Positions 19,246 to 34,846 of a stretch of DNA of 64,000 nucleotides are shown one piece after another. Each line of letters opens with the position of its first letter. Position 1 is the stretch's first letter. A program made the translations under genes and the position numbers. Below the pieces are notes generated by a model. That model worked only from the letters and a program-made list of their open reading frames with translations. It ran no database searches and was not told the origin of the DNA. Origin of the DNA: Auanema rhodensis (taxonomy: Eukaryota; Animalia; Nematoda); the NCBI GenBank assembly GCA_964057225.1, contig OZ059897.1:13578001-13642000 (forward strand), given 5' to 3'.

Positions 19246-22200
19246 ATGAGTATACTATATTCAACTCATTTAAAATATTTATTATTAATATTTGTATTTA
19301 TAATATTATTATCTCAACTTGTTAATGCTAAAGTATGTGAACGAAAAAAAGCGGGACGTAAAGCTTTAAATGATTCATTAACTATAGCTGATGTTGTATT
19401 ATCAGCTACAATACGTGAAGTAACATTTGATACAGATGGATCTCTTCAGGTAATAGTACTTTACATCATTTTTATTATAAAGAAACTCATATTTCAGTCG
19501 CTATCCCTTAGAACACGTCGTATATTCAAAGGCCGGGAATATTTGACAGGAAAGCGTCATGTTACTGTTTTTGGAATAGAAGAAGTTGAAGTAAAGATTA
19601 TTTTTTATTTAATTTATACGTAGTTTATGAATAATTTTAGTGTCCTAAGCATTTATCTCTTCATTCGACTTTGGTATTCCCTCTATCAGTGTCCGGTGAT
19701 CACTTCTTCTTAGCTTCATCTATATTTCCAATTAATCTTAGCATTCTTGATTCTCTTCATGCATTTGCCAGAGGTTAGTAACAAAATTTTATTTATTTTT
19801 ATTTAATTATGTTATTTCTAATTTTTAAAATATCATATAATCTTAATCTACTCTTCATGTTCTATCAAAAATTCACAAATTAATATATTTGTTTTCACTC
19901 GCTTTTACTTGCTATGAACAAGTTTTAGTACTTTTAACTAGCTTGTCCTATTTTATACTTCTTTTCATCTCCTTCTAAGCACAATAATTAGCACATTATG
20001 AATTTTAATTGTCCTGGCTTCTCTCTCTTTCAATCTTTTCTTCATGAAAATATAATGAAAAGCATAGTAGCCTTATACTATTCTCTGAATAGCCAACCAG
20101 CTTGCTCACCAGCTAAGGTTATGTGCTCCAAATTTTAGGAGCAAATTTGTATTTTCCATGCTAATTGTTACAGAACCATGCTTGACAGGTGTTTAGCTGC
20201 TAGCATTGAGAACATATAGACATAGAAATATATAATTAGGGGTGTAATTGGCGCATCCTTATTGAATGAGATTTATGGTAAAATTCTGAAAATATGTTTT
20301 TTAAGTTGTTAACTACATGAAATTACTGTAATTCTATTTTTTTTATCCTTTATATAGAAAAATTATATAATTTAATCGGTACAAGTGATACATTTTACAT
20401 AATTGAGGTATTAATCCGTTTACATAATCTCATCTCCATATTATATCATTTTCTCTACTAGATTTCGTGTATCTCTGCGGTTTTTTTTTACAAATTTATT
20501 TTACTTATACGTATAATATGCGAAGATATTGAATATGTAATTGTGCTAATACAGGTCAAACTCTCTTATACTTGTGTATTTCTCGTAGCTGCCCAAATAT
20601 CTTCGCACCTGACCATGTCGCTTCTATTTGTATTTAGGATTTATAAAATAGCCATCTATTTTGCTACCTTTTCCACTATCATCATTAGTCTATCCGTTCT
20701 TTGGGTTCTGAATGTAAATGTTCCTTCTTTCAATACATCAATTGCTTTGAAAGAAGAATTTGTGTTAGCGAACATGACAAAATGAATTGAATAAGATTTT
20801 ATATGTATAAGTTGAACAAGAAAATATTAAAGTTTTCAAGTAACTATTTGCTCACGCAACTTTTAATCAAAATTTATTTTATAATATAGTCTTTATGTAA
20901 TACAATAAGTAAAGAGTTTTTTTTTAAAGAATAAGAATATTTAAAATTGAGAAAATCTTCTCTTTTGATGATATAAATCATTTTAGGATTACCACACCGG
21001 AAACGACGAAAACCCAAACATAGTAAGTCAATAGTTTTATTATGTTATAAAATAATAAAATAAATGTTATAGTACATAGTAAATATATAGATATACATAT
21101 CATTAAGACAGCTTTCCTTTTTTGATCTGACAATAAACATTTTTTTTATATGATCATGTCACGGTCATCCCTTTATAATATACAATTTTATTATTTGTTT
21201 GTTATTTGTTGTTTTTGTTTTAATTTCAATTAAACTAAAATCAGTTTTAACATTATAATTTAAAATATTTATTTTTATTTATTTCATTACATATAGTAAA
21301 TTTAAAATTAGAAAATAATATATTTCATGTTAAACGTATTCCGACAAACATTCTTAAGACCATATAGCTTGCTTCTGTTAATCCTTTTATACTTTTTGCA
21401 AAATATTTAATGTCTGATAATACTATGGGAATGTTAAAACACATTTTTCACGGATTTGTTGTTTGAGTAGACAAAATTTCTTCTTTTTGAAAAATATGCC
21501 AATTATTAGGGGATCGAAAATAAATTAATAATATCTGTTTTACTATATATTGAAGTAAATTATTAAAATTATATTATATATTATTATTATTTAAATTATA
21601 TTTTTAGCTGTATGTGAATCATCTTTGTGTCCATTAGGATCAAAATGTTCAATAGAAACGTAAGTTATTTGATATAATAATTGAAATATATTAATACTTT
21701 TAATTCTTGAAGTGGTATGTGCGAATGTCGAAGTCATTGTCGATCAGCTGGTCCTCCTGTATGTGGTACTGATCATGTATCATATGCTTCACATTGTCAT
21801 CTGTCTATCCGCTCTTGCTTATTACACAAAAAAGGAAAATCACAGCTCAAATTAGCTTCTCATGGTCATTGCAGTAAGTTTTTTTGCTCAAAATTTTAAA
21901 TACATAGCTAAAGAGCATTTGAGAGATATTTGACTATCTGACTTAAAAGTTCTATTCATGTTTATCCTAAATCAATATTCGGCATTCTTTCGACCTAAAC
22001 AACATAATTTACCTTTTGGATTACTGTATTCAGTGACCGTAGCTACTATACACAAACAGCGTCCTTTGCTTTCATGGCAATGCCAATGATTTTCTTTCAT
22101 TCCTAAACCAATCTATTTGAGAAAGAATATAGGGTAATCTTACTAAATACTATATTTCATTTTGAAATAAACGGTATGATGTTTTTCATGAGCCAAAAGC

Positions 22201-24881
22201 TTAAAACAAGAGTCCATTTTAAGTAAATGGAAAAGATTAACTAAAGACTTAAAAAGGCAATTTCGATAAGAAACTATGCATACATGGGAAACAGACGATG
22301 AGAATAGTGATCATAAAAGTCTGGATATCAAAGAAACATTGTCTCACATTGGATTCGAGAATGATGAAGAATCATCCTTTGTCTGCTGTGTGAAGGGGGA
22401 TAAGCTTCAAGCCAACAGACAGCCTCGTTAGTATGTGATGGGGGCATGTACGCTTATGCGAGAGCTTCTGTTGTTCGCTTAAGCCTAAAGTCATCAATTC
22501 TTCATTCCACTTAGAATCATTTCGTGTCAAGAGTCAATTTTCCCTCCAATTGGCTTTATGCAGTAGTCTGTTGGACTTGATTTCTTAGCTCTAATCTGTG
22601 TGCAATACAAAACCATTTGCATACAACTTGTTGCTTGAACTTTATATATTTCCAAAATATCATAATTCCTTATTTATTATGATTATATTAAATATATTAA
22701 AAATAATTTTAATAATATTAAATGTTCAAGCATGTTATAAGTATCCGCAAGGTAACACTATTATAGCATCTGAATCTTAAACATTCTCTTTTAGGCAAGC
22801 GAAATCCATGTGATGATCTGAGATGTGGCCCAGGAGAAGATTGCGTTGTTTCTCATGTATAAACTTTACAAAAAGTTTTATTGAAAAACAAATTTTATTT
22901 CAGACAAACGGTATTCTATCAGCTACATGTGTATGTCCAGCTTCTTGCCCAAATTATGGAGATGCAGGTAACAAGATTTTTTTCTTCTAAATAGAAAAAT
23001 TTATAATTTTTTATATTATTACTATTATATAATTTATATAAATATTATTTTAAAAATATATATTTAGTTGATTCATCACCCGTTTGTTCTACAAACGGTG
23101 TAGATTATCCATCGTTATGTAAGATGAAGCAGCATGCTTGTTCTGCAAAAACTAATATAACAGCAAAATATTTTGGAAAATGCGGTTAGCTATTTCAATT
23201 TACTGAGCCTATTGTATAAATTTCTTTATTCTTTCTAGATCCTTGCCGTGATTTCACATGTCCCACTGGTACATCTTGTCATTTAGGTGCTCATCGTAAA
23301 CCAGAATGCAGGTAATAAAAGCTTTTCCTTGAGAGTTGATTTGAGAGTTATATTAATCTTCAGATGCAGTGAACAATGTCCTCTAAATTTTGATCCTGTC
23401 TGTGGGACTGATGGAAAAACGTATGCTTTAAAAGATTAACGCAAATATAAAAAACATTTTTCTTAGATATTCAAATGAGTGTGTTATGAGAGTCTCAGGC
23501 TGTAAGCTGGATCAAGCACTTGAAGTTTTCAAGAAAGGGAAATGTGAAGGTTTTTTACTTCAAATTCATTTCAATTTATTAATTTTATTATATTAAAGAT
23601 ATTAAAACACCATGTAGTGATTTGACATGTAGTCATGGAGCTCAATGTCAAATACGTAATGAAACAACAGCTAGTTGTGAATGTGATGCTTCTTGTAGCC
23701 AAATCATGAAGCCAATCTGTGCAACAGTAGGATAACTCTAACGTTTCAGAAAATATTGTTTTTTAGAATGGCATGACTTTTGATAATGATTGTGAACTTC
23801 GAAGATATGCTTGTGAACAAAAAGCTAGAGTTGCAGTTAAACATCAAGGAACCTGTGGTATGCTTGTCTTATTTTTTACATTTAAAAAATTGTTTTGAAT
23901 AAGCATACACCATTCTTGTAGTTTTTTTGTAAATTAGCATTTATATCCCGTGACGTATAAGCATATTCTAATATATATCACGTGCAAAGAGTTTAACGTA
24001 ATTTTTCCTTTTTCCTTTTTATTTTTTTTCAAACACGAGCAAGCTAATGAACTATATTCATTTTTAATTGTGCCATTACATAAATTAAAAAAAACATTAT
24101 TCCAGGTTTTGGTCTCTGTGCTTCCTTTGAAGGATGTGTAGCTCCACAAGTGTGTATACTAGTTCAAGAGAAGCCTGTATGTGCCTGTCCAGAATGTTCC
24201 GATGAACTAAGAGAGGTTTCTATTATTTAAAAAAATTTATAACTAATATTCAATAATTTAGGTTTGTGCCAGTAATGGTAGAACTTATCCGAATGAATGC
24301 AAAATGAGAAGAGAAGCATGTTTATTGGATGACAAGTTTTATGTAAAATACAATGGTGTTTGTGGTTCGTTAATTGTGAAAATTTATAATTTGTAAAAAT
24401 AATTATTCATAGATGGTTGTTCCAAAATTTCTTGTGAATTCTACTCTGTTTGCATTTCTGATGGAATTTCAAAACCAGGTTGTCGTTGTCCTAATGATTG
24501 TCCCAATATCAAAGATACAAAAGTATGAAATTGTTGTTTTATTTAATTTTTTAAAGACTATTGTAGGCTCATGTTTGTGGAACGGATGGTGTTACTTATT
24601 CATCAGAGTGTCATCTTCGACGTAGTGCTTGTGAGCAGAAGAAATTTATTGTTGTGGCATTTAAAGGCAAATGTGGTAAGCTAATTAATTTTTAACTAAT
24701 TACGTTAATTATATTGTATTTATATATATTTTTTGTTGTTTTAGATGCATGTCAACATGTAGAATGCAGATACGGAGAAGAATGCCGTAGTGGGATATGC
24801 GTATGCAGTTATAATTGTCCAAGTAATCCACCAGCTTCTATGAAAGTTTGTGGAGAGAATGGAGTAAGTTTATTTTATTAT

Positions 24882-24961
<80 letters not shown>

Positions 24962-27900
24962 ATATTAACTTTCAATTAATTAAAAAATTTATATAATTAA
25001 ATTATTTTTTTTTAAATAATAATATTTTTCAGGTTTTATATCCGTCTGAATGTCATTTACAATTAGCCGCATGTCAGAAAAGTTCTCCGATTTCTGTAAT
25101 GCCATTAGCTCATTGTCATTCATCAGTATCAACGTTCAGTGGTAAGTTAACACTAAATTGATTGAACTGTGTTTCTTATCCCTTTCTTTCTAGTTTACAG
25201 TCTTTTCACTCATATTAGTTTATTGTTTTTTCTTTTAGCGACTTCTATGCCTTTTTTTTTTGCTTTAAGTTTTTTTTATGTTTGATGTAGCTTACGATAA
25301 GTTGAAGGTTACTCTTAGAACTCATAATTGGATGTGATCTAAACTGATTATCGGCTTTTTTCATCTTTCAAGTAATGATAGATAGTTTCGCTTTACTTTC
25401 TGTTCTATCATTATCTAATTATCTTTTTGAAAACAAAAAATCGTTTGTTATAGCTCGTTACATGTGTTCAGCTTCAAGCTGTTCTCATGGTGGCTATTGT
25501 TCAACAGATTTATCACAATGTATTTGTGAGCCGAAAACTTGTAAGGAACGCAATTATTCTCAGTGTGGTTCTGATGGCAACGTCTATCTGAATCAATGCC
25601 ATATGAATATTGTTTCATGTTTGGAACAACGTGATATACATGTTCAGCCCCGTCTATCAGATTGTGCCCAGAGAAACTATGGTCTCATATGCAAATTTTC
25701 AACAAATAATGTTTAAATCTATTAATATATGTTATAGATACATGTGAATGTAATCGTATTGGATCGATTGGCCCAGCTTGTGATTCAGATGGATTTTGCG
25801 CGTAAGTTTCAAAAATTCAAATTATTCTAAATTTATTAATTATATTCTATTTCAGATGTCGTGCTGGAATTGCTGGTAAAAAATGTGATCATTGTTTACC
25901 TTCATTTTGGGGAATACATCTGATTGCTAACGGAGCATTATCATGTCAACGTATGATCAAATCAGATACTCAACAACTTACTTTTTCTAATTTTCAGCAT
26001 GTGGATGCTCAGCTTTCGGATCAGCTCGGGCTGATTGTGAGCAAAGTACTGGAAGGTAGGATGAATTTTTCAAATATAATTGAAGCATAAGATATTTAGA
26101 TGTGAATGTAAAAATGGAGCATTTGGAGATAAATGTGATAAATGTGGATCCGATATGATTATGACACCCAGTGGTTGTGTAAGTAAAGAAGAATATCATT
26201 CACCAGGGTATGCATTTTTAATTTTGTATTCAATATATTCAATATAATTATTATCATATTTTATAATTTTTTATTTAGTGATTGTAATGAATTGAAATGT
26301 TATCATGATGCTATATGCTCTTCTGAGCCTGATGGATCACTTCCAGATTGTATATGTCCAGAACAATGCAACTCTAATCATCTAGGAATTGGTATAACAT
26401 TCTTCATTTATAAATATTTTTTTATTTTTTTGTAATAATTTCAGCTGCTAATATGACTGTTTGTGGAACTGATGGTGTTACGTATGAAAACTTCTGTCAA
26501 CTTCAACAATTTGCTTGTAAGCATCAAATCGATTTAGTTGTTAAATCTTTGGGAATTTGTGATGAAGGTAAAATAAAATAAAATATTATATTTTATTATA
26601 ATATTTATTTATTATAGAATCAGAGATTGTAGATAGATTTGAGAGAAATAAGGATTCTACAGTTCGCCTTGGCTCACATTGTACTTTACCTAGTGATTGT
26701 GCAGAGGTGCGTTTGTTTATTCAAAATATTGAAAATACATATATGTATATGCATGTTTGTATGTTTTCTTAAATAATAATTATAATTCTTTCACCCTACA
26801 TGCAGTTTGTTGTTTATGGATATCCTTTTTTTGATATTTCTTTAAATCCCTAGCTGGCAAACATTGTTTGTCTGTCTATAGTTATTCATATATGTAACCA
26901 AGCTCTAAAGTTCAGACATTAATTATTTGAATAAAAATATGTTTTCATTGTAATGAAAAAATATAAAAACTATAAAACATATGTATTATTGTATATATCT
27001 GTTTAGATTAATGCAATTTGTAAGCTTCGAGCTAATCGTCGCGGAGTATGCTCATGTTCAGATGCATCTCGAAGAACAATGGATGGACGTTGTGAAGTCA
27101 TTAATGAGATAGGTTGGTTACTTCTTGATGCCATTTTTCTCAAATCTTTCATACGCCAACACATATACATATAAGATAATGTAGTCATTTAGTTTATTAA
27201 CTCAACTCAAAAGCTAAATATACATTATAGTAATCTGGCACATAGTTAAATATTTATGTTTTTTTTTCTTTTGAAATAGTCTTTTGATCTTTTGAAATAG
27301 AATAGAATATAATATTATTATTATTTCATTTTATTAATTTCCATTTTTTTAAAAATTTGGAATGGTTTATGATTATGATATTTTACTTTACTTTGTGTGT
27401 TTTTTAAGAGGAAATGAAATTAGATGTCAAGATTAATGGACGCAATGGTTATAGAGTTGACATAAAGGATTTATATTTATATTTTAATTTTAGTCTAGAG
27501 GTAATCTTATGACCTTTTAATAATTGAAAAACATTTTATTTTTTTCCTAGATTAATCCACAGGTTTCAAATGGATTAATATTACTTGGAGAAGGTGAAGA
27601 AGGATCCAACTTTCAGCTGAGATTAGAAAATCGCCGATTTGTTGTTGAGTAAGTTTAGCTGTTTTCTCAGAAATACAAAGTTCTTCATCGAAAAAAAAAT
27701 AATTTAATCAAAATCAAGTGCATGATGAAACGTCTCTGAGTGTTCAGAATGTTTGAAGTTTAGAAAAAAAAACATATGTTTATGTACAAATATTCAACAA
27801 TGAGTTATCCTAGTAAAAATACTAAGACTAATATTAATGTGACACAAAAAAAAGTTGCAAAAGCTATTAAAGCCACCATGAATATGGAAACAAAATGTCC

Positions 27901-30900
27901 AAACGTGTCAGCATCGTACTCATTCATACAACATGGAAACCAACTGCATCGAAGATGACGTCCTTGGATTGAAGAATATTCACATGACTAAAAAATGAAA
28001 TGTATATCTATATATATCTATATCTATATATATATTAACTTTTTTTTTGTTTTTAAATGAAATTCAGATCTAGTACATGCTTTTGGTTTGGTTTCAACAG
28101 GCTTGATTTTGAAAAATTTAGTTAGAAAGAATACAGAATACTTACACCTTCATCACTACCATTATCATCATCTACAGGAGCACGACTATATTGTGAACTT
28201 CTTGGTGATATGCCGATCGCTCCTTTTCCTGGTTCAATTGAAATACTTAAAGATGGGGCCCTTGAATTGCTTAAAGCATTATTTGCTTTTTGTAAAAAAA
28301 ATGTATTAGGCAATGTATTTCTTAGGAGGAAGATAATTCAAACATCATACCTATTGAATATTACCATAACGTTCAACTATAGAGCTTGTTAATATATTAT
28401 AGAGATATATAGAAAATATAAATATTTGATAGAAAAATGATCAATAACTCTGAAGAATTTTAAATTATTAGTTCTTATCTTCATATTGTCTTATTGATTA
28501 TTCTATACGGTTTGAACTGATTAGTTATAGTTTGAGAATAATTTTGATGATATAATCCAAAGTTTAAAATGAAAAAAGTCAGATGATATTAATTTGAATT
28601 AATTTTTTTTGCAGAATTGGAGATGATTTATTATATTCAAGAGATTACGTTCCATTACATCTGAATAGTACAGTTAGCTTAGTATGGAAAAACAAGTTGG
28701 CCACGCTGCATACATCAGATGCTCGTGTATCTATGAGAATTGAAACAAAAAACCAGAAACTTCGTAGTTTATGGATTGGTTCAAATACGTATGAATAGTT
28801 ATATAATATATGTTTTAATTATATTATTATAGTTTACAATTTGGAAGACCAAATGAGGGTACTATTTGGAAATTGAATGTTAACCAAAATCCTATTTACC
28901 AGAATAATGTTATACCATTAAGTAACTTTGAAGGTAGCATTGATGATGATTTAGAGTACTTTGAGTAATCACTTATGTTTTTAGGCAAAGCTTCTCATCC
29001 ATACTTACACCCATTGTCATTTGTTGGAGATGGATATTTAGAATTTTTCAATGTTTCTATTGATATTCGTAACAGAGCAGAGTTTGAGATACAGTTGAAA
29101 CCAGTTGGTGGCGATGGTACGAATTATATTTCTATATATTTTTTATTTTTATTTTTATTTTTATTTTTAAGGATTAATATTACATTGGACTTCTACACGT
29201 AAAGAAGAATTTAATGATGATTTTATATCTCTTTTCCTTATTGGATATGAACCACATTTATATTGGGATTTAGGATCAGGAGTAGGACATCTAAAGTTTG
29301 TACTAATTTTATTTTATTTTAATATTCAATATAATAATAATATTATTATTTTGTAGAGGAACAGTGTTAAATAGCCAACAGTTCAATACAATACGTTTTG
29401 GACATCATTTCAAAAATGGTTCTATTTCTGTGAATGGAAAATCTCCAATATTTATGAATTCACCGGTAAATGTTTTCACCTAATTGCATGAGAATGCCCA
29501 AAATTTTTTATTTCATATTTAAAAAAGATTTTATAATTTTTGAGAAACGGAAGAAAATTGTTTTACATCTTATAAGTATTCAGAATCTTTCATCAACTCC
29601 AAATTCCAAAGCAATCCATAGAAAGCAAAACTCTTGAGTATTTTTTTCAATTCGATAAGTACATGAGAAGCAGAAAAAAATGAAATAAAAAATAAGTCAC
29701 AACAGCATAATTTGGCAAATTTATGTATGGTTGAATGAAACATAGTTAGGAAGTTTGAGCTTTCAAGTTTTTTTTCTATCATATCATTTTCAATCACATT
29801 CTAAAACTTAATCATATATACGTTCAACTAATAAAAAACATTTCAAAACGTTTTGAAACTTAGAATGTTCTTATTGAGACTTTTTTCCTGTTTACTATCT
29901 GTTTTTAAATATGTCTCGTGTAACATTGCAATGATTCAATGTTTAGTTTTGGTAAAAATAATCATTATACTTTTCAGGGTCGTCAACAACACCTGGATAT
30001 TTTGCATGAAACACTTTATGTAGGTGGTTTACCACCATCAAACAATGCTGAGTCTGATGATGAGAAGGACAGGGACGCCCTTCCGAATCATCATTTAATA
30101 TCATCGGAGCTTCAGTCGAGTCTTATATCCCGGAAATCCATCGAGCCTTTCCGAGGACGTATTGACTGGATATCTATTAATGAGCAGATGTTGGATTTCA
30201 GAATGGTGAGCTAGCTTAAACATTATAAAATTGAAAAGGCAACAGGGTTTTCTATAAAATGTTTTCAAACTCGAAGGTAAAATGATATTGATATCTTAAT
30301 TTCAATCTCCACAACTTTTTCCGTACGCTATGACATACTTGATCAAATCATTGTTGGAATGAAAAATAGTTAAGCTATTTACATGAAATATTGAAATGTT
30401 TACATGAAATAACTGATATGTATGTACATTTCAAGAAAAAGGACGTCCGATCTGAGTCTTAAAAGCCTCACTTTTGGAGAACTCCTTCGTATTGCTCTTG
30501 TCTTGTCTATTCAGCGGAAAACTGACGTTTATCCGTTTGCTCATTTTCTCCTAAAATTGAACCAAACATAGGAAATATTTTCTTTCCTTTTTTTCAACGC
30601 AATAGTTAATATATAGTAATAATAATCTATTATTTCAAAAGTATTCTATACTCTTAGATCATGTTCAGTACTATTTTCTAAAAATTATAGATATAGACAA
30701 GGAAACACATACTAATAGTTGTTTTTTTGGTGCATTTAGTATTTATGTTAAATTCATTTTATAAAAAGAAAAAGAAGATAATAAGTATTTAAATAATTTA
30801 TTAATACAGTTTATTATAACATGGATATAAACCATAATATTACGATTACATTCAAAGTCAAAAATTCAAAGTTCAGAATTACAACGAATGTGTAAATCTC

Positions 30901-33900
30901 ATTAAAAATGGCTGTTTTTTGATGTTTGTGTCTCAGAAAAAAATGTGCTCGATGTTCGTGTGATAGTCATCATTGTCTTAAAATAACGTTGATATATGCA
31001 AAATGACGACAAAATGTTTTAAACTTCTGTTGTCACATTTGATGAATTTCTTGAGACGTTTGTTAGTGGCCATGCAATAATCGTTGATAGGAGGATAACA
31101 TCAGAATTTTAAACAATGAATTAATCGACGTTAATAAGGAAAAGAAGTAATATATATATGTTTATTCCAACTTAACGTACTGAGATCGAATTAAGAGAAG
31201 GTATTAACAGAATAAATCAGGAAAACGTGGGTGATTCAGAGGAAAAAGGAAGACGGGGGAGATATAATGATAGAGAGAGACATTTAAAGGTGTGGGTGTA
31301 GTAGATTGACTGATCATAGCTGAGATATATTGATAAAAAAAACATTTTTTAGCTGAATATTGCTAATTGACCAAACACAATCAAAGATGTCGTACCACTA
31401 GATGTATACGCTTTCTTTACACATCTGAAAAAGCGGAACTTGTAACAATGCTGCATTGCGAACAGTACTATAGCTCAATTAAATGTTTCAACCGGATGTA
31501 CAAGCGTGACTAGCTTCATCAGTCGTCCAAAGAAACTTTTGGAACTTTTGTGAAAAACGAAATTGAACTATGTGCATAAGAAAGCAGACTAAACTGACGA
31601 TTGTTCAATGTATTTAGTCATGTCATTGTTCAATCTTCAGAAGTCACACGATGTTAATCAAATGAAGATCAAACAATAATCTAGATTACTACCATATTTC
31701 ATTTAGATAACTGATATCCTCTATACGTTGAACAAAGATTGAAATTACTACCTGTTATGTTTAGATCAGAGAAAAACCAGCAGAAGATTAGCCCAGTCTA
31801 TAGTAAGCATTAGCCCTTGCTCTGCTTAATGACTCAGTTCTTTTGGTGTTTTGCACACTTGGCATCTGAAAAAAAGAAAAATGGTTTTGTCGAAGACGCT
31901 TACATGAAATGTATCTATCTAATTTGAAATTATCTTTACTTTGTCTTCTTTTCTTAATTAACAGAATCGTTAGCTTATACGTAATAGGCAATGTTTTGAA
32001 GAAGAAAAAAAAGAAGAAGACATGACGACAAGTTATGTTTTTGAACTTGCCTCAAATGAGGCTTTGTTCCTTATTCGAAAGACAATGATATGTTTTTTTT
32101 CCATATTGTCATGATATTTTCTAGTTGTTTCAACTAGGTAAAGATAGGGTGAGAGAAAGAAAAAGAGAGAGAGAAAGAGAAAGAGAAAAAAAGAGAGAAA
32201 CTACGATTAACTATATAATATACCACAAATATGTTAGCTATTTTGAACAAGATGTCAAAAGTTTTTAGGATAAATAGGTAAGTAACTTCTGAAAAAAAAT
32301 TGCTTTGTATTCGCAGATTTTATCTTTTGTTTGAACTTATTTTATTCATGCTCAAAAAAACATATGCTAGTTATTTTGAACAAACCTAAGTTTTTAAGAA
32401 ATGCTCTTTCATAAAGAAATAAAAGATATATAGTGGTAATAGAAAAAGAAATAAACAAACTAGATCGCTTAGTATATCATAATTCAAAACATATTCTACA
32501 AGCTTTATTACAACTTTATGATCTATCTATATATGTTGCTTACGTCACTTCATGCAACGAATATTACTTATTGTAAATGAGTGATGAGTATTTTTATAGA
32601 TTGAATAGATATGAATGAGAATATTTTGAAAAATGACAATGCTGATGACTTGCCTGCATTTCAATATTTCTCCAGATATGTTGAAAGTTTCTCTTTGGTA
32701 AAGCATACTCATCTTGATAGTCAGAAGTATCTGTAGAGATAATAATGTATTACATAACTGAGGTTGTTCATTTCTCTCTCTCTCTTTCTCTTTTTCTCTC
32801 TCTTTACCATCTTTTCACAATTCCCCTCTGTACATCACTTATTTCAATGTTTTGGCGCAAACTTCTAGAAAGGCTCAATGCAAGATGTGCATTGAATACT
32901 CTCACGGTTGTACAAAACTGTGTTACATACCAATGCTGAAAGCTTGACAAGCAACTAGGATAGCACAGAATACGAGAAGCTTGAAATTCATGTTGGGCAA
33001 CGGTGTAGTCGATGAGAATTCTGAAGAAGACGCTTTGAGACTCTGGTCGGCAAGCTAAATGTCTTATCCTACGCTAGTAGGCGTGGCTTTAAGAGGAGGA
33101 GCCTTGGACCAAAATTTAAGAAAGAAAATGCCTTTTTAAGATTTTCTAGCTCAATGCTATAGAAGATGTGTATGTAATAATATAAATAAAGTGAAAGCAT
33201 TATGAGAAAACAAAAATAAAAAATCTAAATCAAGTATATAACTTTAAAAAAATCTTCGAAAGGTCTCAAATATCATAAAATTATATCCGTAGCTTCATTT
33301 ATGTTATCCGTTTTTTCATCTCCTTATCCTTATTTGGTTTATTCATAAAATTAGTACTAGTCAGACAAAAACCAAATGTTTTTGTAGAATTGAAATCAAA
33401 ACTAAAAATATGAAGAAAAATCTTATGGAATGTTCTAGAAAAACTTAATTTGCTCTAAATACTTTTCATTCAGGCAAAAATCAAAGGAGAAGTCTCACGC
33501 AATATTCGTTGTTCACAGAATTGTGATTTTGGAGAAACATGTTATCAAAAGAAAAATGATCAGTTTTGCCGAGGTAAAATATATTTAATATATAATTTGA
33601 ATAAAGAAAAATTAATTAAATCATAATAATAAAAACTAGGTTTAGGTGCCACCAATGTGACGTCCATTCAGCTCTCCGGCCGCCATGACTTTGGATATCC
33701 AAATTCTGGAGATAGATTGTATTTTTGTTTTTATATATTTTGATAAATTATGCAAAAAAGTAATTTTCAGCTTGTCATCAACTAATTCGTCTACATTTTC
33801 ATTCGAATTCAAGCCTCAGTCTTCAAATGGCATCATTTGGTGGGAATCAACATGGTTAGCAAGAGAGGATGGAGATTTTTTCATCATCTACTTAACAAAG

Positions 33901-34846
33901 GGTATGATTATATATATATAATATTATATTTATAATTTGTAATTTTGAAATATATGCACATTCTTGAACATATTTTTATTTGATGAAATAGTAAAGAATT
34001 GTCTTGCAGGTCAACTGAAAATGGGATTAAATTTGGGAAATGATCTGAAGTTTCGTCCAGTTGTATTAAAAAATAAAATTGAAAATGGAGAATGGTATAC
34101 AATAAATGTTGATAGGTATAGAAAAAAAAATTTAATATAGTTTAATTGATTTTAATTTGTTTAGAAAAGATCGAAGAATCCGCGTAAAAGTAAATTCTGA
34201 AAAAGAATTAACAATCGTAACAACGCCTGGTTCAACAGAATTAAATACAAATGGAATTGTTTATTTAGGTAAGAATCATCAATTTAAGATTTCTTTTTTA
34301 TTTCTTAATAATTCAATAATAAAACTTAATAATAATTCTAAAACTATTATTATAGTATCATTCATTTTTTTAAAAACCTAATTGCATTAAAATTAGAATC
34401 AAAAAAAAAGCTTACACTAACTTATTACGCAAAAACAAATGTCATGAAAAATGAAAGAAAGGTTCTCATGCTTGTTTTTATGTTAAAATGTCGTAACATA
34501 TTATATTTGAGATATTATTTCTAAAAGTCAAATAAGACATAAAAAAAAAAGAAAATCATAAACCTATTCATAAAATAATAATTTTGACAACGATATATAT
34601 TTTTTTTTCATTTTATTTTTGGTTTTGTTTATAAGTTAATCACAAAACAAATTTGTTATATTTATTCTTAATTATCTATCTATCAATTTTAAATTTTTAG
34701 GCGGCAGGAAAAACTGCAAGAAATCATCTATTCCTGTACAATCTATGTTTACCGGATGTGTGAGGAATTTGGTTCTTAATATGAAACCCGTGAACTTATT
34801 ACATGATTCTATTTCGGATGTTATGCCATCAGCATGTGGTGCATGA
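19246..34846 (+). CDS. agr-1: Agrin: signal peptide, NtA, 8 follistatin/Kazal repeats, 2 laminin-EGF, 1 follistatin, small Cys module, degenerate LG, LG, EGF-like, LG
   Basis: About 43 GT-AG exons join in one frame from MSILYSTHLKYLLLIFVFIILLSQLVNA (signal peptide). The path runs through NtA (ADVVLSATIREV...RRIFKGRE), repeated PVCGTDGxTYxxECxL Kazal motifs (21608-25681, 26279-26567), laminin-EGF (CECNRIGS..., CGCSAFGSARADCEQSTGRCEC) and LG domains (LYWDLGSG, LYVGGLP, PGSTELNTNGIVYLGG, FTGCVRNL) to TGA at 34844-34846. Confidence 0.92.
24885..24957. repeat. (AT)n microsatellite
   Basis: AT run of about 70 nt in an agrin intron. Confidence 0.95.
27805..28367 (-). CDS. Nested antisense gene in an agrin intron: small putative tail-anchored membrane protein
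   Basis: Exon about 28320-28146 (..KANNALSNSRAPSLSISIEPGKGAIGISPRSSQYSRAPVDDDNGSDEG) ends at GTAAGT in phase 0. Exon 27987-27805 follows a ttttttag acceptor in phase 0 and reads SCEYSSIQGRHLRCSWFPCCMNEYDADTFGHFVSIFMVALIAFATFFCVTLILVLVFLLG*. The 5' end is uncertain (candidate ATG at 28367). Confidence 0.65.

What the first reader, a model, noticed from the sequence alone, without database searches (positions are those of the whole stretch)
27805..28367. Hidden antisense gene inside an agrin intron encoding a small Cys-flanked tail-anchored protein
Seen: agrin splices cleanly from 27648 to 28615, leaving a 966-nt intron. Its minus strand has a Ser/Pro/acidic exon ending in GAAGGT|GTAAGT (28146) and, in matching phase, a terminal exon (27987-27805). 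That exon encodes RCSWFPCC followed by about 28 uncharged hydrophobic residues ending right at the stop. A possible middle exon 28101-28040 (PVETKPKACTRSEFHLKTKK), flanked by typical 44- and 52-nt introns, would be in frame if its A9 run were A10, so it may be an assembly error or a frame-switching exon. The ORF track misses the terminal exon. Inference: an unannotated 120-145 aa tail-anchored, possibly palmitoylated membrane protein that I cannot assign to a family, nested within the diverged LG1 region.
Basis: partly seen in the sequence, partly recalled or inferred. Interest (0 to 1): 0.75.

Follow-up and report, generated by a model that had tools for sequence, protein, structure and literature searches.

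The report
Nested F41G3.18-like gene in agrin intron

Summary
The + strand host gene has the agrin domain layout. It has a 966-nt GT-AG intron at 27649-28614.

On the minus strand, the terminal exon 27987-27805 is 69-82% identical to small proteins of about 30 nematode species. BLASTP against C. elegans F41G3.18 (88 aa) gives E = 4e-28. C. elegans agrin is F41G3.12, on the same cosmid, so at least the neighbourhood is conserved.

The conserved part is C-x4-CC, an acidic linker, FGH[HFY], and a nearly invariant 28-residue hydrophobic helix that ends at the stop codon. This is a tail anchor. It has no Pfam family, no PDB relative and no literature. Conservation starts upstream of the exon's only Met, so an upstream exon is required.

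- it has 64 open codons ending in a phase-0 GTAAGT donor (p about 7.5e-4);
- its GC content is 41%, against 21% in the flanks;
- it shows no significant homology and has no ATG.

ATG 28367 with an 81-nt intron gives a model of about 107 aa, but the 5' end is unresolved. The proposed middle or frame-switching exon is unsupported. The function is inferred, not shown.

Verdict: a new member of a known but uncharacterised family, of modest interest.

The parts
27649..28614 (+). Host intron of the agrin-type gene (966 nt, GTAAGT...TTGCAG) that contains the whole nested gene as modelled
   Evidence: GT-AG boundaries, and the frame is open across the junction. Host architecture.
27805..27987 (-). Terminal coding exon of the nested gene (60 codons plus TAA), preceded by the acceptor TTTTTTAG
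   Evidence: One search gives the translation. Searches give orthologue hits (E down to 1e-23 for this exon); 69% identity to C. elegans F41G3.18, E = 4e-28.
27928..27948 (-). Conserved Cys motif C-S-W-F-P-C-C (residues 14-20 of the exon)
   Evidence: C14 in 27/30, P18 in 27/31, C19 in 28/31 and C20 in 30/31 family members.
27808..27891 (-). C-terminal transmembrane tail anchor (residues 33-60 of the exon), ending at the stop codon
   Evidence: Kyte-Doolittle 19-residue means reach 2.97. AlphaFold2 gives one helix over residues 23-59, with pLDDT 88-98 in the last 30 residues; the segment is nearly invariant.
27988..28145 (-). Intron 2 of the nested gene (158 nt, GTAAGT...TTTTTTAG, 21.5% GC). 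It holds an AT/GATA microsatellite and an A9 run.
   Evidence: The phase-0 join is needed because conservation starts upstream of the only Met of the terminal exon.
28146..28269 (-). Exon 2, the Ser/Pro/acidic cytosolic region. It is the core of a 64-codon open frame (28337-28146) with no ATG. The 5' boundary is uncertain (28269 or 28320).
   Evidence: One search gives the translation; p about 7.5e-4 for such an open frame before a phase-0 GTRAGT donor; 41% GC against 21-22% in the flanks. No significant homology.
28270..28350 (-). Putative intron 1 (81 nt, GTATGA...TTTAAG). An in-frame alternative is a 30-nt intron at 28321-28350.
   Evidence: Read. The GC profile favours the 81-nt version. 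There is no RNA evidence.
28351..28367 (-). Putative first coding exon (17 nt: the ATG, four further codons and two bases of the next codon, ending AG|GTATGA)
   Evidence: This is the only upstream ATG that joins the exon-2 frame in phase. Inferred, not shown.
28040..28101 (-).
   Evidence: One search gives the translation. It is out of frame, its donor is AAA|GTTAAT, and orthologues have no counterpart.
21723..26581 (+). Upstream part of the host gene: about 9 Kazal/follistatin exons, then a laminin-EGF exon at 26080-26199 and a last Kazal exon at 26453-26581. This is the agrin layout.
   Evidence: 10 of the genome's 13 Kazal_2 matches lie here on the + strand. Kazal_2 at E = 7.8e-10 and EGF_laminin at E = 2e-4.

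Best explanation
Window 27805-28367 (minus strand) holds a real, single-copy protein-coding gene. It lies antisense inside the intron of the agrin orthologue that interrupts the region after the last Kazal and EGF domains. It is the orthologue of C. elegans F41G3.18.

Shown:
- The terminal exon encodes the family's conserved module: C-x4-CC, an acidic linker, F-G-H-[HFY], and a 28-residue, almost invariant hydrophobic helix that ends at the stop codon.
- Conservation begins upstream of the exon's only Met, and a stop codon sits directly in front of the exon. The exon must therefore be spliced to an upstream coding exon.

Inferred gene model:
- exon 1, 28367-28351 (ATG);
- an 81-nt intron;
- exon 2, 28269-28146 (Ser/Pro/acidic);
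- a 158-nt intron;
- exon 3, 27987-27805.
This gives about 107 aa.

Inferred mechanism:
- The protein is tail-anchored. It has no lumenal residues after the TMD, so it would be inserted post-translationally (GET/TRC40-type route). Its acidic, probably disordered N-terminus would face the cytosol.
- The Cys cluster near the membrane is a likely S-acylation site.
- The TMD is conserved on all helical faces from Plectus to strongylids. This argues that the helix is itself the functional part. It would pack against a conserved membrane partner or against itself, as a small accessory or regulatory subunit, and would not be a passive anchor.
For: Orthology:
- 6 hits at E = 1e-23 to 4e-12, 71-82% identity.
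- a cluster member is named 'Protein F41G3.18 [Haemonchus contortus]'.
- C. elegans CELE_F41G3.18 itself (P0046, 88 aa, on a 15,279,421-bp contig).
- 38/55 identities, E = 4e-28.

Family breadth and conservation:
- Caenorhabditis, Mesorhabditis, strongylids, Strongyloididae, Steinernema, Panagrolaimidae, Acrobeloides and Plectus.
- 25 of 60 columns invariant.
- per-position counts.

Tail anchor:
- hydropathy.
- a single helix over residues 23-59, pLDDT 88-98.

Copy number and upstream exon:
- single copy in the genome.
- upstream exon open frame, p about 7.5e-4.
- upstream exon 41% GC against 21% in the flanks.

Host gene and neighbourhood:
- the host has the agrin layout.
- PMC1939731: C. elegans agr-1 is F41G3.12, on cosmid F41G3, with a very big intron after exon 24.
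Against: - No transcript evidence could be obtained.
- Exon 2 shows no significant similarity to orthologue N-termini (summed shuffle p = 0.09), and it has no ATG.
- Both candidate acceptors for exon 2 are AAG rather than the usual YAG.
- The window's protein has Phe where 27 of 31 relatives have the second His (FGHF against FGHH).
- Membrane insertion, acylation and any partner are inferred only. No Pfam, PDB or literature link exists.
- That F41G3.18 lies inside an agr-1 intron in C. elegans rests on the shared cosmid name. Coordinates were not checked.
Confidence: 0.85

Rival explanations
1. The gene is real but shorter than modelled. One version is a two-exon gene of 68 aa. It would start at the +1-frame ATG at 28171 (MMIMVVMK), use the overlapping donor AAG|GTGTAA (exon end 28148), and join exon 3 in phase. 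The other version is only the 40-aa ORF from the internal Met (27927-27805).
For: -: ATG at 28171 directly after a TAG, and the donor AAG|GT has the consensus exonic AAG.
- a 40-aa ATG ORF exists.
- several database entries are 40-44 aa.
- The long exon-2 frame has no ATG and no significant homology.
Against: - Conservation extends 13 residues upstream of the internal Met (QGRHLRCSWFPCC against QGRHLKCSWLPCC), so the 40-aa version loses conserved sequence.
- GTGTAA lacks the +5 G, whereas the other donor is a perfect GTAAGT.
- All full-length orthologues have a hydrophilic, acidic N-terminus of 30-50 residues, not a hydrophobic one.
- The 64-codon open frame and its GC peak would be left unexplained.
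Confidence: 0.1
2. The locus is a decaying or unexpressed relic of the F41G3.18 orthologue. The terminal exon is still intact but the 5' part has been lost.
For: - There is no ATG in the exon-2 frame, and the candidate acceptors are weak.
- The second His of FGHH is replaced by Phe.
- No transcript data are available.
Against: - The terminal exon is intact over 60 codons in a region with about 8% stop codons per random codon.
- It keeps all invariant positions of the family.
- Position 32 also varies in other species (Y in two relatives, Q in one).
- It is the only copy in the genome.
- An in-phase ATG exon is available.
Confidence: 0.04
3. There is no separate gene. The open frames are chance ORFs in an AT-rich intron, or the conserved block is an alternative agrin exon or a regulatory element on the + strand.
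For: Hrus et al. looked for alternative exons in the introns between the LamG exons. Introns can hold conserved non-coding elements.
Against: - The conservation is at protein level, in the minus-strand frame, and reaches the stop codon.
- Matches are to independently predicted small proteins in about 30 species, including a curated C. elegans gene.
- Hrus et al. found no alternative agrin exons.
- Rfam finds nothing in 24000-32000.
Confidence: 0.01

Closest known systems
C. elegans F41G3.18 and its annotated nematode orthologues (e.g. H. contortus CDJ80149.1 'Protein F41G3.18', S. ratti SRAE_X000255600, C. brenneri CAEBREN_02281)
   Same: - The C-terminal module is the same: C-x4-CC, acidic linker, FGH[H], and an invariant TMD ending ..VF.LG-stop. 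Identity to the C. elegans protein is 69% over 55 residues.
- The proteins are small, with an acidic/Ser-rich N-terminus.
- The C. elegans gene sits on the same cosmid as agrin (F41G3.12; PMC1939731).
   Different: - The N-terminal half is not alignable with significance and is longer here (model about 107 aa against 88 aa).
- FGHF replaces FGHH, and WF replaces WL.
- The family has no Pfam model, no name and no published function.
Regulin-type tail-anchored micropeptides (phospholamban, sarcolipin, sarcolamban). This is a resemblance from general knowledge only.
   Same: Both are small single-pass proteins whose conserved C-terminal TMD ends at or near the C-terminus. Both have a short cytosolic regulatory N-terminus. 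In both, the helix itself is the working part.
   Different: - There is no sequence similarity. A profile search of all PDB chain sequences gave only chance-level hits (E >= 0.56), none of them a regulin.
- The Cys cluster and FGHH motif have no counterpart in regulins.
- No link to SERCA or to any partner has been tested.
CYSTM (Cys-rich tail-anchored module, Pfam PF12734) and the 'CX domain' name carried by one UniRef entry
   Same: Both are Cys-containing small proteins with a C-terminal membrane anchor.
   Different: Pfam scans of the exon and of 12 family members gave no CYSTM, CX or any other family at E <= 10. The database names are automatic and inconsistent.
Nested intronic genes in nematodes (a general phenomenon)
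   Same: It is a small gene lying wholly within an intron of a larger host gene, on the opposite strand.
   Different: Here the same pair of genes (agrin and F41G3.18) appears to be neighbours in two distant nematodes. The exact nesting in C. elegans was not verified.

Membership tests
F41G3.18 orthologue group (nematode small tail-anchored proteins) | Significant sequence similarity to C. elegans F41G3.18 and its orthologues over the conserved C-terminal module | tested here: met
   E = 4e-28, 38/55 identical; hits in about 30 species.
F41G3.18 orthologue group (nematode small tail-anchored proteins) | Cys motif C-x4-C-C upstream of the TMD | tested here: met
   C14, C19 and C20 are present (CSWFPCC). 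These positions are conserved in 27/30, 28/31 and 30/31 members.
F41G3.18 orthologue group (nematode small tail-anchored proteins) | F-G-H-H at the membrane interface | tested here: inconclusive
   the window has FGHF. G30 is invariant and H31 is present. Position 32 is H in 27/31 members, with Y and Q in other species.
F41G3.18 orthologue group (nematode small tail-anchored proteins) | Full length of 75-135 aa with a Met-initiated hydrophilic N-terminus | tested here: inconclusive
   The exon-2 frame has no ATG. In-phase models of about 107 aa exist but have no RNA support. N-terminal homology is not significant.
F41G3.18 orthologue group (nematode small tail-anchored proteins) | Genomic position next to or inside the agrin gene | tested here: inconclusive
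   Met in this window. For C. elegans, only the shared cosmid name with agr-1 (F41G3.12) is available.
Tail-anchored membrane proteins (class) | A single hydrophobic TMD within about 30 residues of the C-terminus | tested here: met
   hydropathy up to 2.97 over residues 33-60, and the stop follows directly; a single helix over residues 23-59.
Tail-anchored membrane proteins (class) | No N-terminal signal peptide; post-translational insertion | not testable with these tools
   The N-terminus is unresolved in this window. Orthologue N-termini are hydrophilic. The insertion route needs an experiment.
Regulins (phospholamban / sarcolipin / sarcolamban) | Sequence relationship to known regulins | tested here: not met
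   the profile against all PDB chain sequences gave no regulin, and the best hit was E = 0.56 to unrelated proteins; no Pfam family.
CYSTM / CX-module proteins | Match to the Pfam model | tested here: not met
   no such hit at E <= 10.
Agrin (host gene) | Run of follistatin/Kazal domains, then laminin-EGF, then Kazal, then LamG domains | tested here: met
   10 Kazal_2 matches on the + strand at window 21723-26560. EGF_laminin at 26080-26199 and Kazal at 26453-26581. LamG is only weakly detected (window 34694-34780, E = 4.5). The exons flanking the intron are not recognised as LamG.

The most novel reading that the evidence does not exclude
The F41G3.18 family is a nematode (possibly wider ecdysozoan) regulin-like micropeptide. 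In this reading, its invariant tail-anchor helix binds and tunes a conserved membrane transporter or channel. Its conserved antisense nesting in the agrin gene would couple or oppose the expression of the two genes. Agrin alleles and intron-containing reporters would then have unknowingly affected a second gene.
Probability: 0.1. Interest if true: 0.65.

Novelty: new member of a known kind. Interest (0 to 1): 0.3.

Why it matters
- It adds a correct small gene to the annotation of this genome. Gene finders often truncate or miss this gene. Database entries for orthologues range from 40-aa fragments to fused 167-aa models, and they carry contradictory automatic names.
- It flags an unstudied family. 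The transmembrane helix is almost unchanged from Plectus to strongylid parasites, which usually signals a specific partner within the membrane.
- It warns that deletions, CRISPR edits or reporters that include this agrin intron may also hit a second, conserved gene.

Tried and rejected
- Pfam on all three putative exons and on 12 family members: no family found.
- ESM Atlas with the exon: no usable hit. With the distant relative P0034: only sub-threshold leads to arthropod clusters, score 0.85.
- Profile against PDB chain sequences: chance-level hits only.
- Profiles of orthologues (whole length, and N-termini only) against all stop-to-stop fragments of the region and of the window: only the terminal exon scores, and exon 2 is not detected.
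- Shuffle test of exon 2 against 14 orthologue N-termini: not significant, summed p = 0.09.
- BLASTP of exon 2 against F41G3.18: only a collinear but non-significant SI.I..G...SPR match, E = 2.6.
- Two metagenome scans for related contigs, to test nesting in other nematodes: no locus found.
The genomic context of the H. contortus, C. auriculariae and C. elegans orthologues could not be inspected, and no transcript assemblies could be reached.
- Pfam and PDB searches on the agrin exons flanking the intron did not recognise LamG.
- Literature searches for F41G3.18 and for orthologue locus tags: zero papers.
- Rfam on 24000-32000: nothing found.
- A motif-based intron-length histogram was too sparse to judge the 30-nt intron.
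It is out of frame, has a poor donor and has no orthologous counterpart.
- The joined (spliced) protein model was not searched or folded.
Full report
**Observation**

The window is AT-rich, about 30% GC. It lies at G000:C5:13578001-13642000 in a 181-Mb genome.

On the + strand, an exon ends ..TTTGTTGTTGA|GTAAGT at 27648. The next exon starts after TTTTTTGCAG| at 28615. The reading frame continues across the join as ..RLENRRFVV-E-IGDDLLYSRDY...

The host gene has the agrin layout:
- Ten of the genome's thirteen Kazal_2 matches lie on the + strand at window 21723-26560.
- A laminin-EGF exon lies at 26080-26199, and a last Kazal exon at 26453-26581.
- This matches the 7F-2LE-F-EG-2LamG order that Hrus et al. 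describe for C. elegans AGR-1 (PMC1939731).

The LamG part is poorly recognisable. The two exons flanking the intron get no Pfam or PDB hit. The only LamG_2 signal in the window is weak (34694-34780, E = 4.5).

**The terminal exon is a conserved coding exon**

Minus-strand 27987-27805 translates to 60 codons plus TAA. A word-based search returned six small nematode proteins at E = 1e-23 to 4e-12 and 71-82% identity. One member of the Haemonchus cluster is named 'Protein F41G3.18 [Haemonchus contortus]'.

Further searches brought in more relatives:
- C. elegans CELE_F41G3.18 itself (P0046, 88 aa, on a contig of 15,279,421 bp);
- other Caenorhabditis species, Mesorhabditis and strongylids;
- Strongyloides, Parastrongyloides and Rhabditophanes;
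- Steinernema, Panagrolaimus, Panagrellus, Acrobeloides and Plectus.

Direct BLASTP of the exon against F41G3.18 gives 38/55 identities, E = 4e-28.

The exhaustive HMMER search of 1.84 billion representatives found only 13 proteins at E <= 0.001. Five of them are distant, unnamed sequences from assemblies (P0030-P0034) that keep the [VI]GHH.SI...V..IA..TF motif and the C-terminal position. The family is therefore small and specific. The gene is single-copy in this genome.

**What the conserved module is**

In an alignment of 31 members, the conserved elements are:
- C14 (27/30), P18 (27/31), C19 (28/31) and C20 (30/31);
- an acidic linker;
- F29-G30-H31-H32 (G invariant);
- an almost invariant run, VSIFMVALVAFATFFCVTLILVLVFLLG, that ends at the stop codon.

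Hydropathy reaches 2.97. AlphaFold2 predicts one continuous helix over residues 23-59, with pLDDT 88-98 in the last 30 residues. This is the anatomy of a tail-anchored protein. Conservation covers all faces of the helix, not one stripe.

There is no Pfam family, no PDB sequence relative and no paper that names the gene or its orthologue tags. The database names on orthologues (CX domain, Tetraspanin-7, U-box, COX2_TM, GPCR profile, Ovule protein) contradict each other. They have no Pfam support.

**Gene structure in the window**

The terminal exon's frame is closed by the TAG of its own acceptor. Its only Met is residue 21. The conserved QGRHLRCSWFPCC (compare C. auriculariae QGRHLKCSWLPCC) lies upstream of that Met. 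An upstream coding exon in phase 0 is therefore required.

Evidence for it:
- A first-order Markov simulation of the 627 nt upstream gives 0.075% for an open frame of 60 or more codons before a phase-0 GTRAGT.
- The segment 28146-28269 is 41% GC, against 21-22% on both sides and 34-37% in agrin exons.
- Its acidic end (DDDNGSDEG) resembles the acidic stretch that precedes the Cys motif in orthologues.

Formal homology is absent, however:
- Profile searches do not detect it.
- BLASTP against F41G3.18 gives only a collinear, non-significant match (SISIEPGKGAIG--ISPR against SIVIDFGRKSIVNVESPR, E = 2.6).
- A shuffle test over 14 orthologue N-termini gives p = 0.09.

The frame also has no ATG. The in-frame ATG at 28367 is separated from it by a stop. 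Removing either an 81-nt intron (28350-28270) or a 30-nt intron (28350-28321) joins them in phase. The GC drop at 28270-28320 favours the 81-nt version, which gives a model of about 107 aa. Both acceptors are AAG.

A competing short model uses the ATG at 28171 in the +1 frame and the overlapping donor AAG|GTGTAA. It gives 68 aa. I rate it less likely, because the donor is poorer and the hydrophobic N-terminus is unlike any orthologue.

I reject it.

The spliced protein was not assembled for any search or fold. The exons were used separately by reference.

**Conserved neighbourhood**

Hrus et al. (PMC1939731) state that C. elegans agr-1 is F41G3.12 on cosmid F41G3. [quoted passage not shown] The orthologue's name, F41G3.18, puts it on the same cosmid. 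The host intron in this window lies at the corresponding place, after the last Kazal and EGF exons.

Conserved linkage is therefore very likely, and nesting in the same intron is plausible. Two metagenome scans also gave no loci.

**Mechanism (inferred)**

- Post-translational insertion of the C-terminal helix, with the N-terminus in the cytosol.
- S-acylation of the Cys cluster 13-19 residues before the helix.
- A conserved Cys in mid-helix (28/31).
- Function through helix-helix contacts with a conserved membrane partner or with itself.

The family works like small tail-anchored regulators such as the regulins. Membership of that family was tested by sequence and not met. A metal site formed by the Cys cluster and the His pair is an alternative use of the same residues. 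The window's FGHF weakens this reading.

**Verdict**

It is not an orphan. It is the local orthologue of an annotated but unstudied nematode gene. The 5' end is unresolved, and the frame-switch exon is unsupported.

Novelty: a new member of a known kind. Interest is modest. It rests mainly on the unusually invariant helix and on the possibly ancient pairing with agrin.

Noticed in passing
window 21723-26581 (+): Ten of the thirteen Kazal_2 matches in the whole 181-Mb genome sit in this one gene. A laminin-EGF exon (26080-26199) lies between the last two Kazal exons. This is a clean agrin (agr-1) architecture.
   Followed up: partly
window 27554-27648, 28615-28795, 28975-29139 and 34694-34780 (+): The presumed LamG exons of the host gene are so diverged that Pfam and PDB sequence searches miss them. 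The only LamG_2 signal is E = 4.5 at 34694-34780. This also implies that the gene runs on for about 6 kb past the nested gene.
   Followed up: partly
window 27991-28048 (-): Intron 2 of the nested gene holds an AT/GATA-type microsatellite and an A9 run (28040-28048). GC here falls to about 12%.
   Followed up: partly
window 27776-27958 (+) and 28088-28309 (+): Two + strand ORFs of 60 aa and 73 aa mirror the two minus-strand exons. They are probably shadow ORFs opposite real coding sequence, not genes.
   Followed up: no
proteins P0030, P0031, P0032, P0033, P0034: These are distant, unnamed relatives from ENA, Logan and NCBI assemblies. They keep the GHH.SI...IA..TF tail anchor and a Cys cluster, but their N-termini are different and more GC-rich. 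The family may reach beyond Chromadorea. The ESM Atlas gave only sub-threshold leads to arthropod clusters.
   Followed up: partly
orthologue database entries: Orthologues carry mutually contradictory automatic names (CX domain, Tetraspanin-7, U-box, COX2_TM, GPCR family 1 profile, Ovule protein). Their lengths run from 40-aa fragments to a 167-aa fused model. A 596-aa JGI protein (P0017) sits in one cluster although it looks unrelated.
   Followed up: partly
window 27779-27784 (-): CATAAA lies 21 nt after the stop codon, followed by a T-run. It is a possible variant poly(A) signal that would keep the 3' UTR inside the host intron.
   Followed up: no
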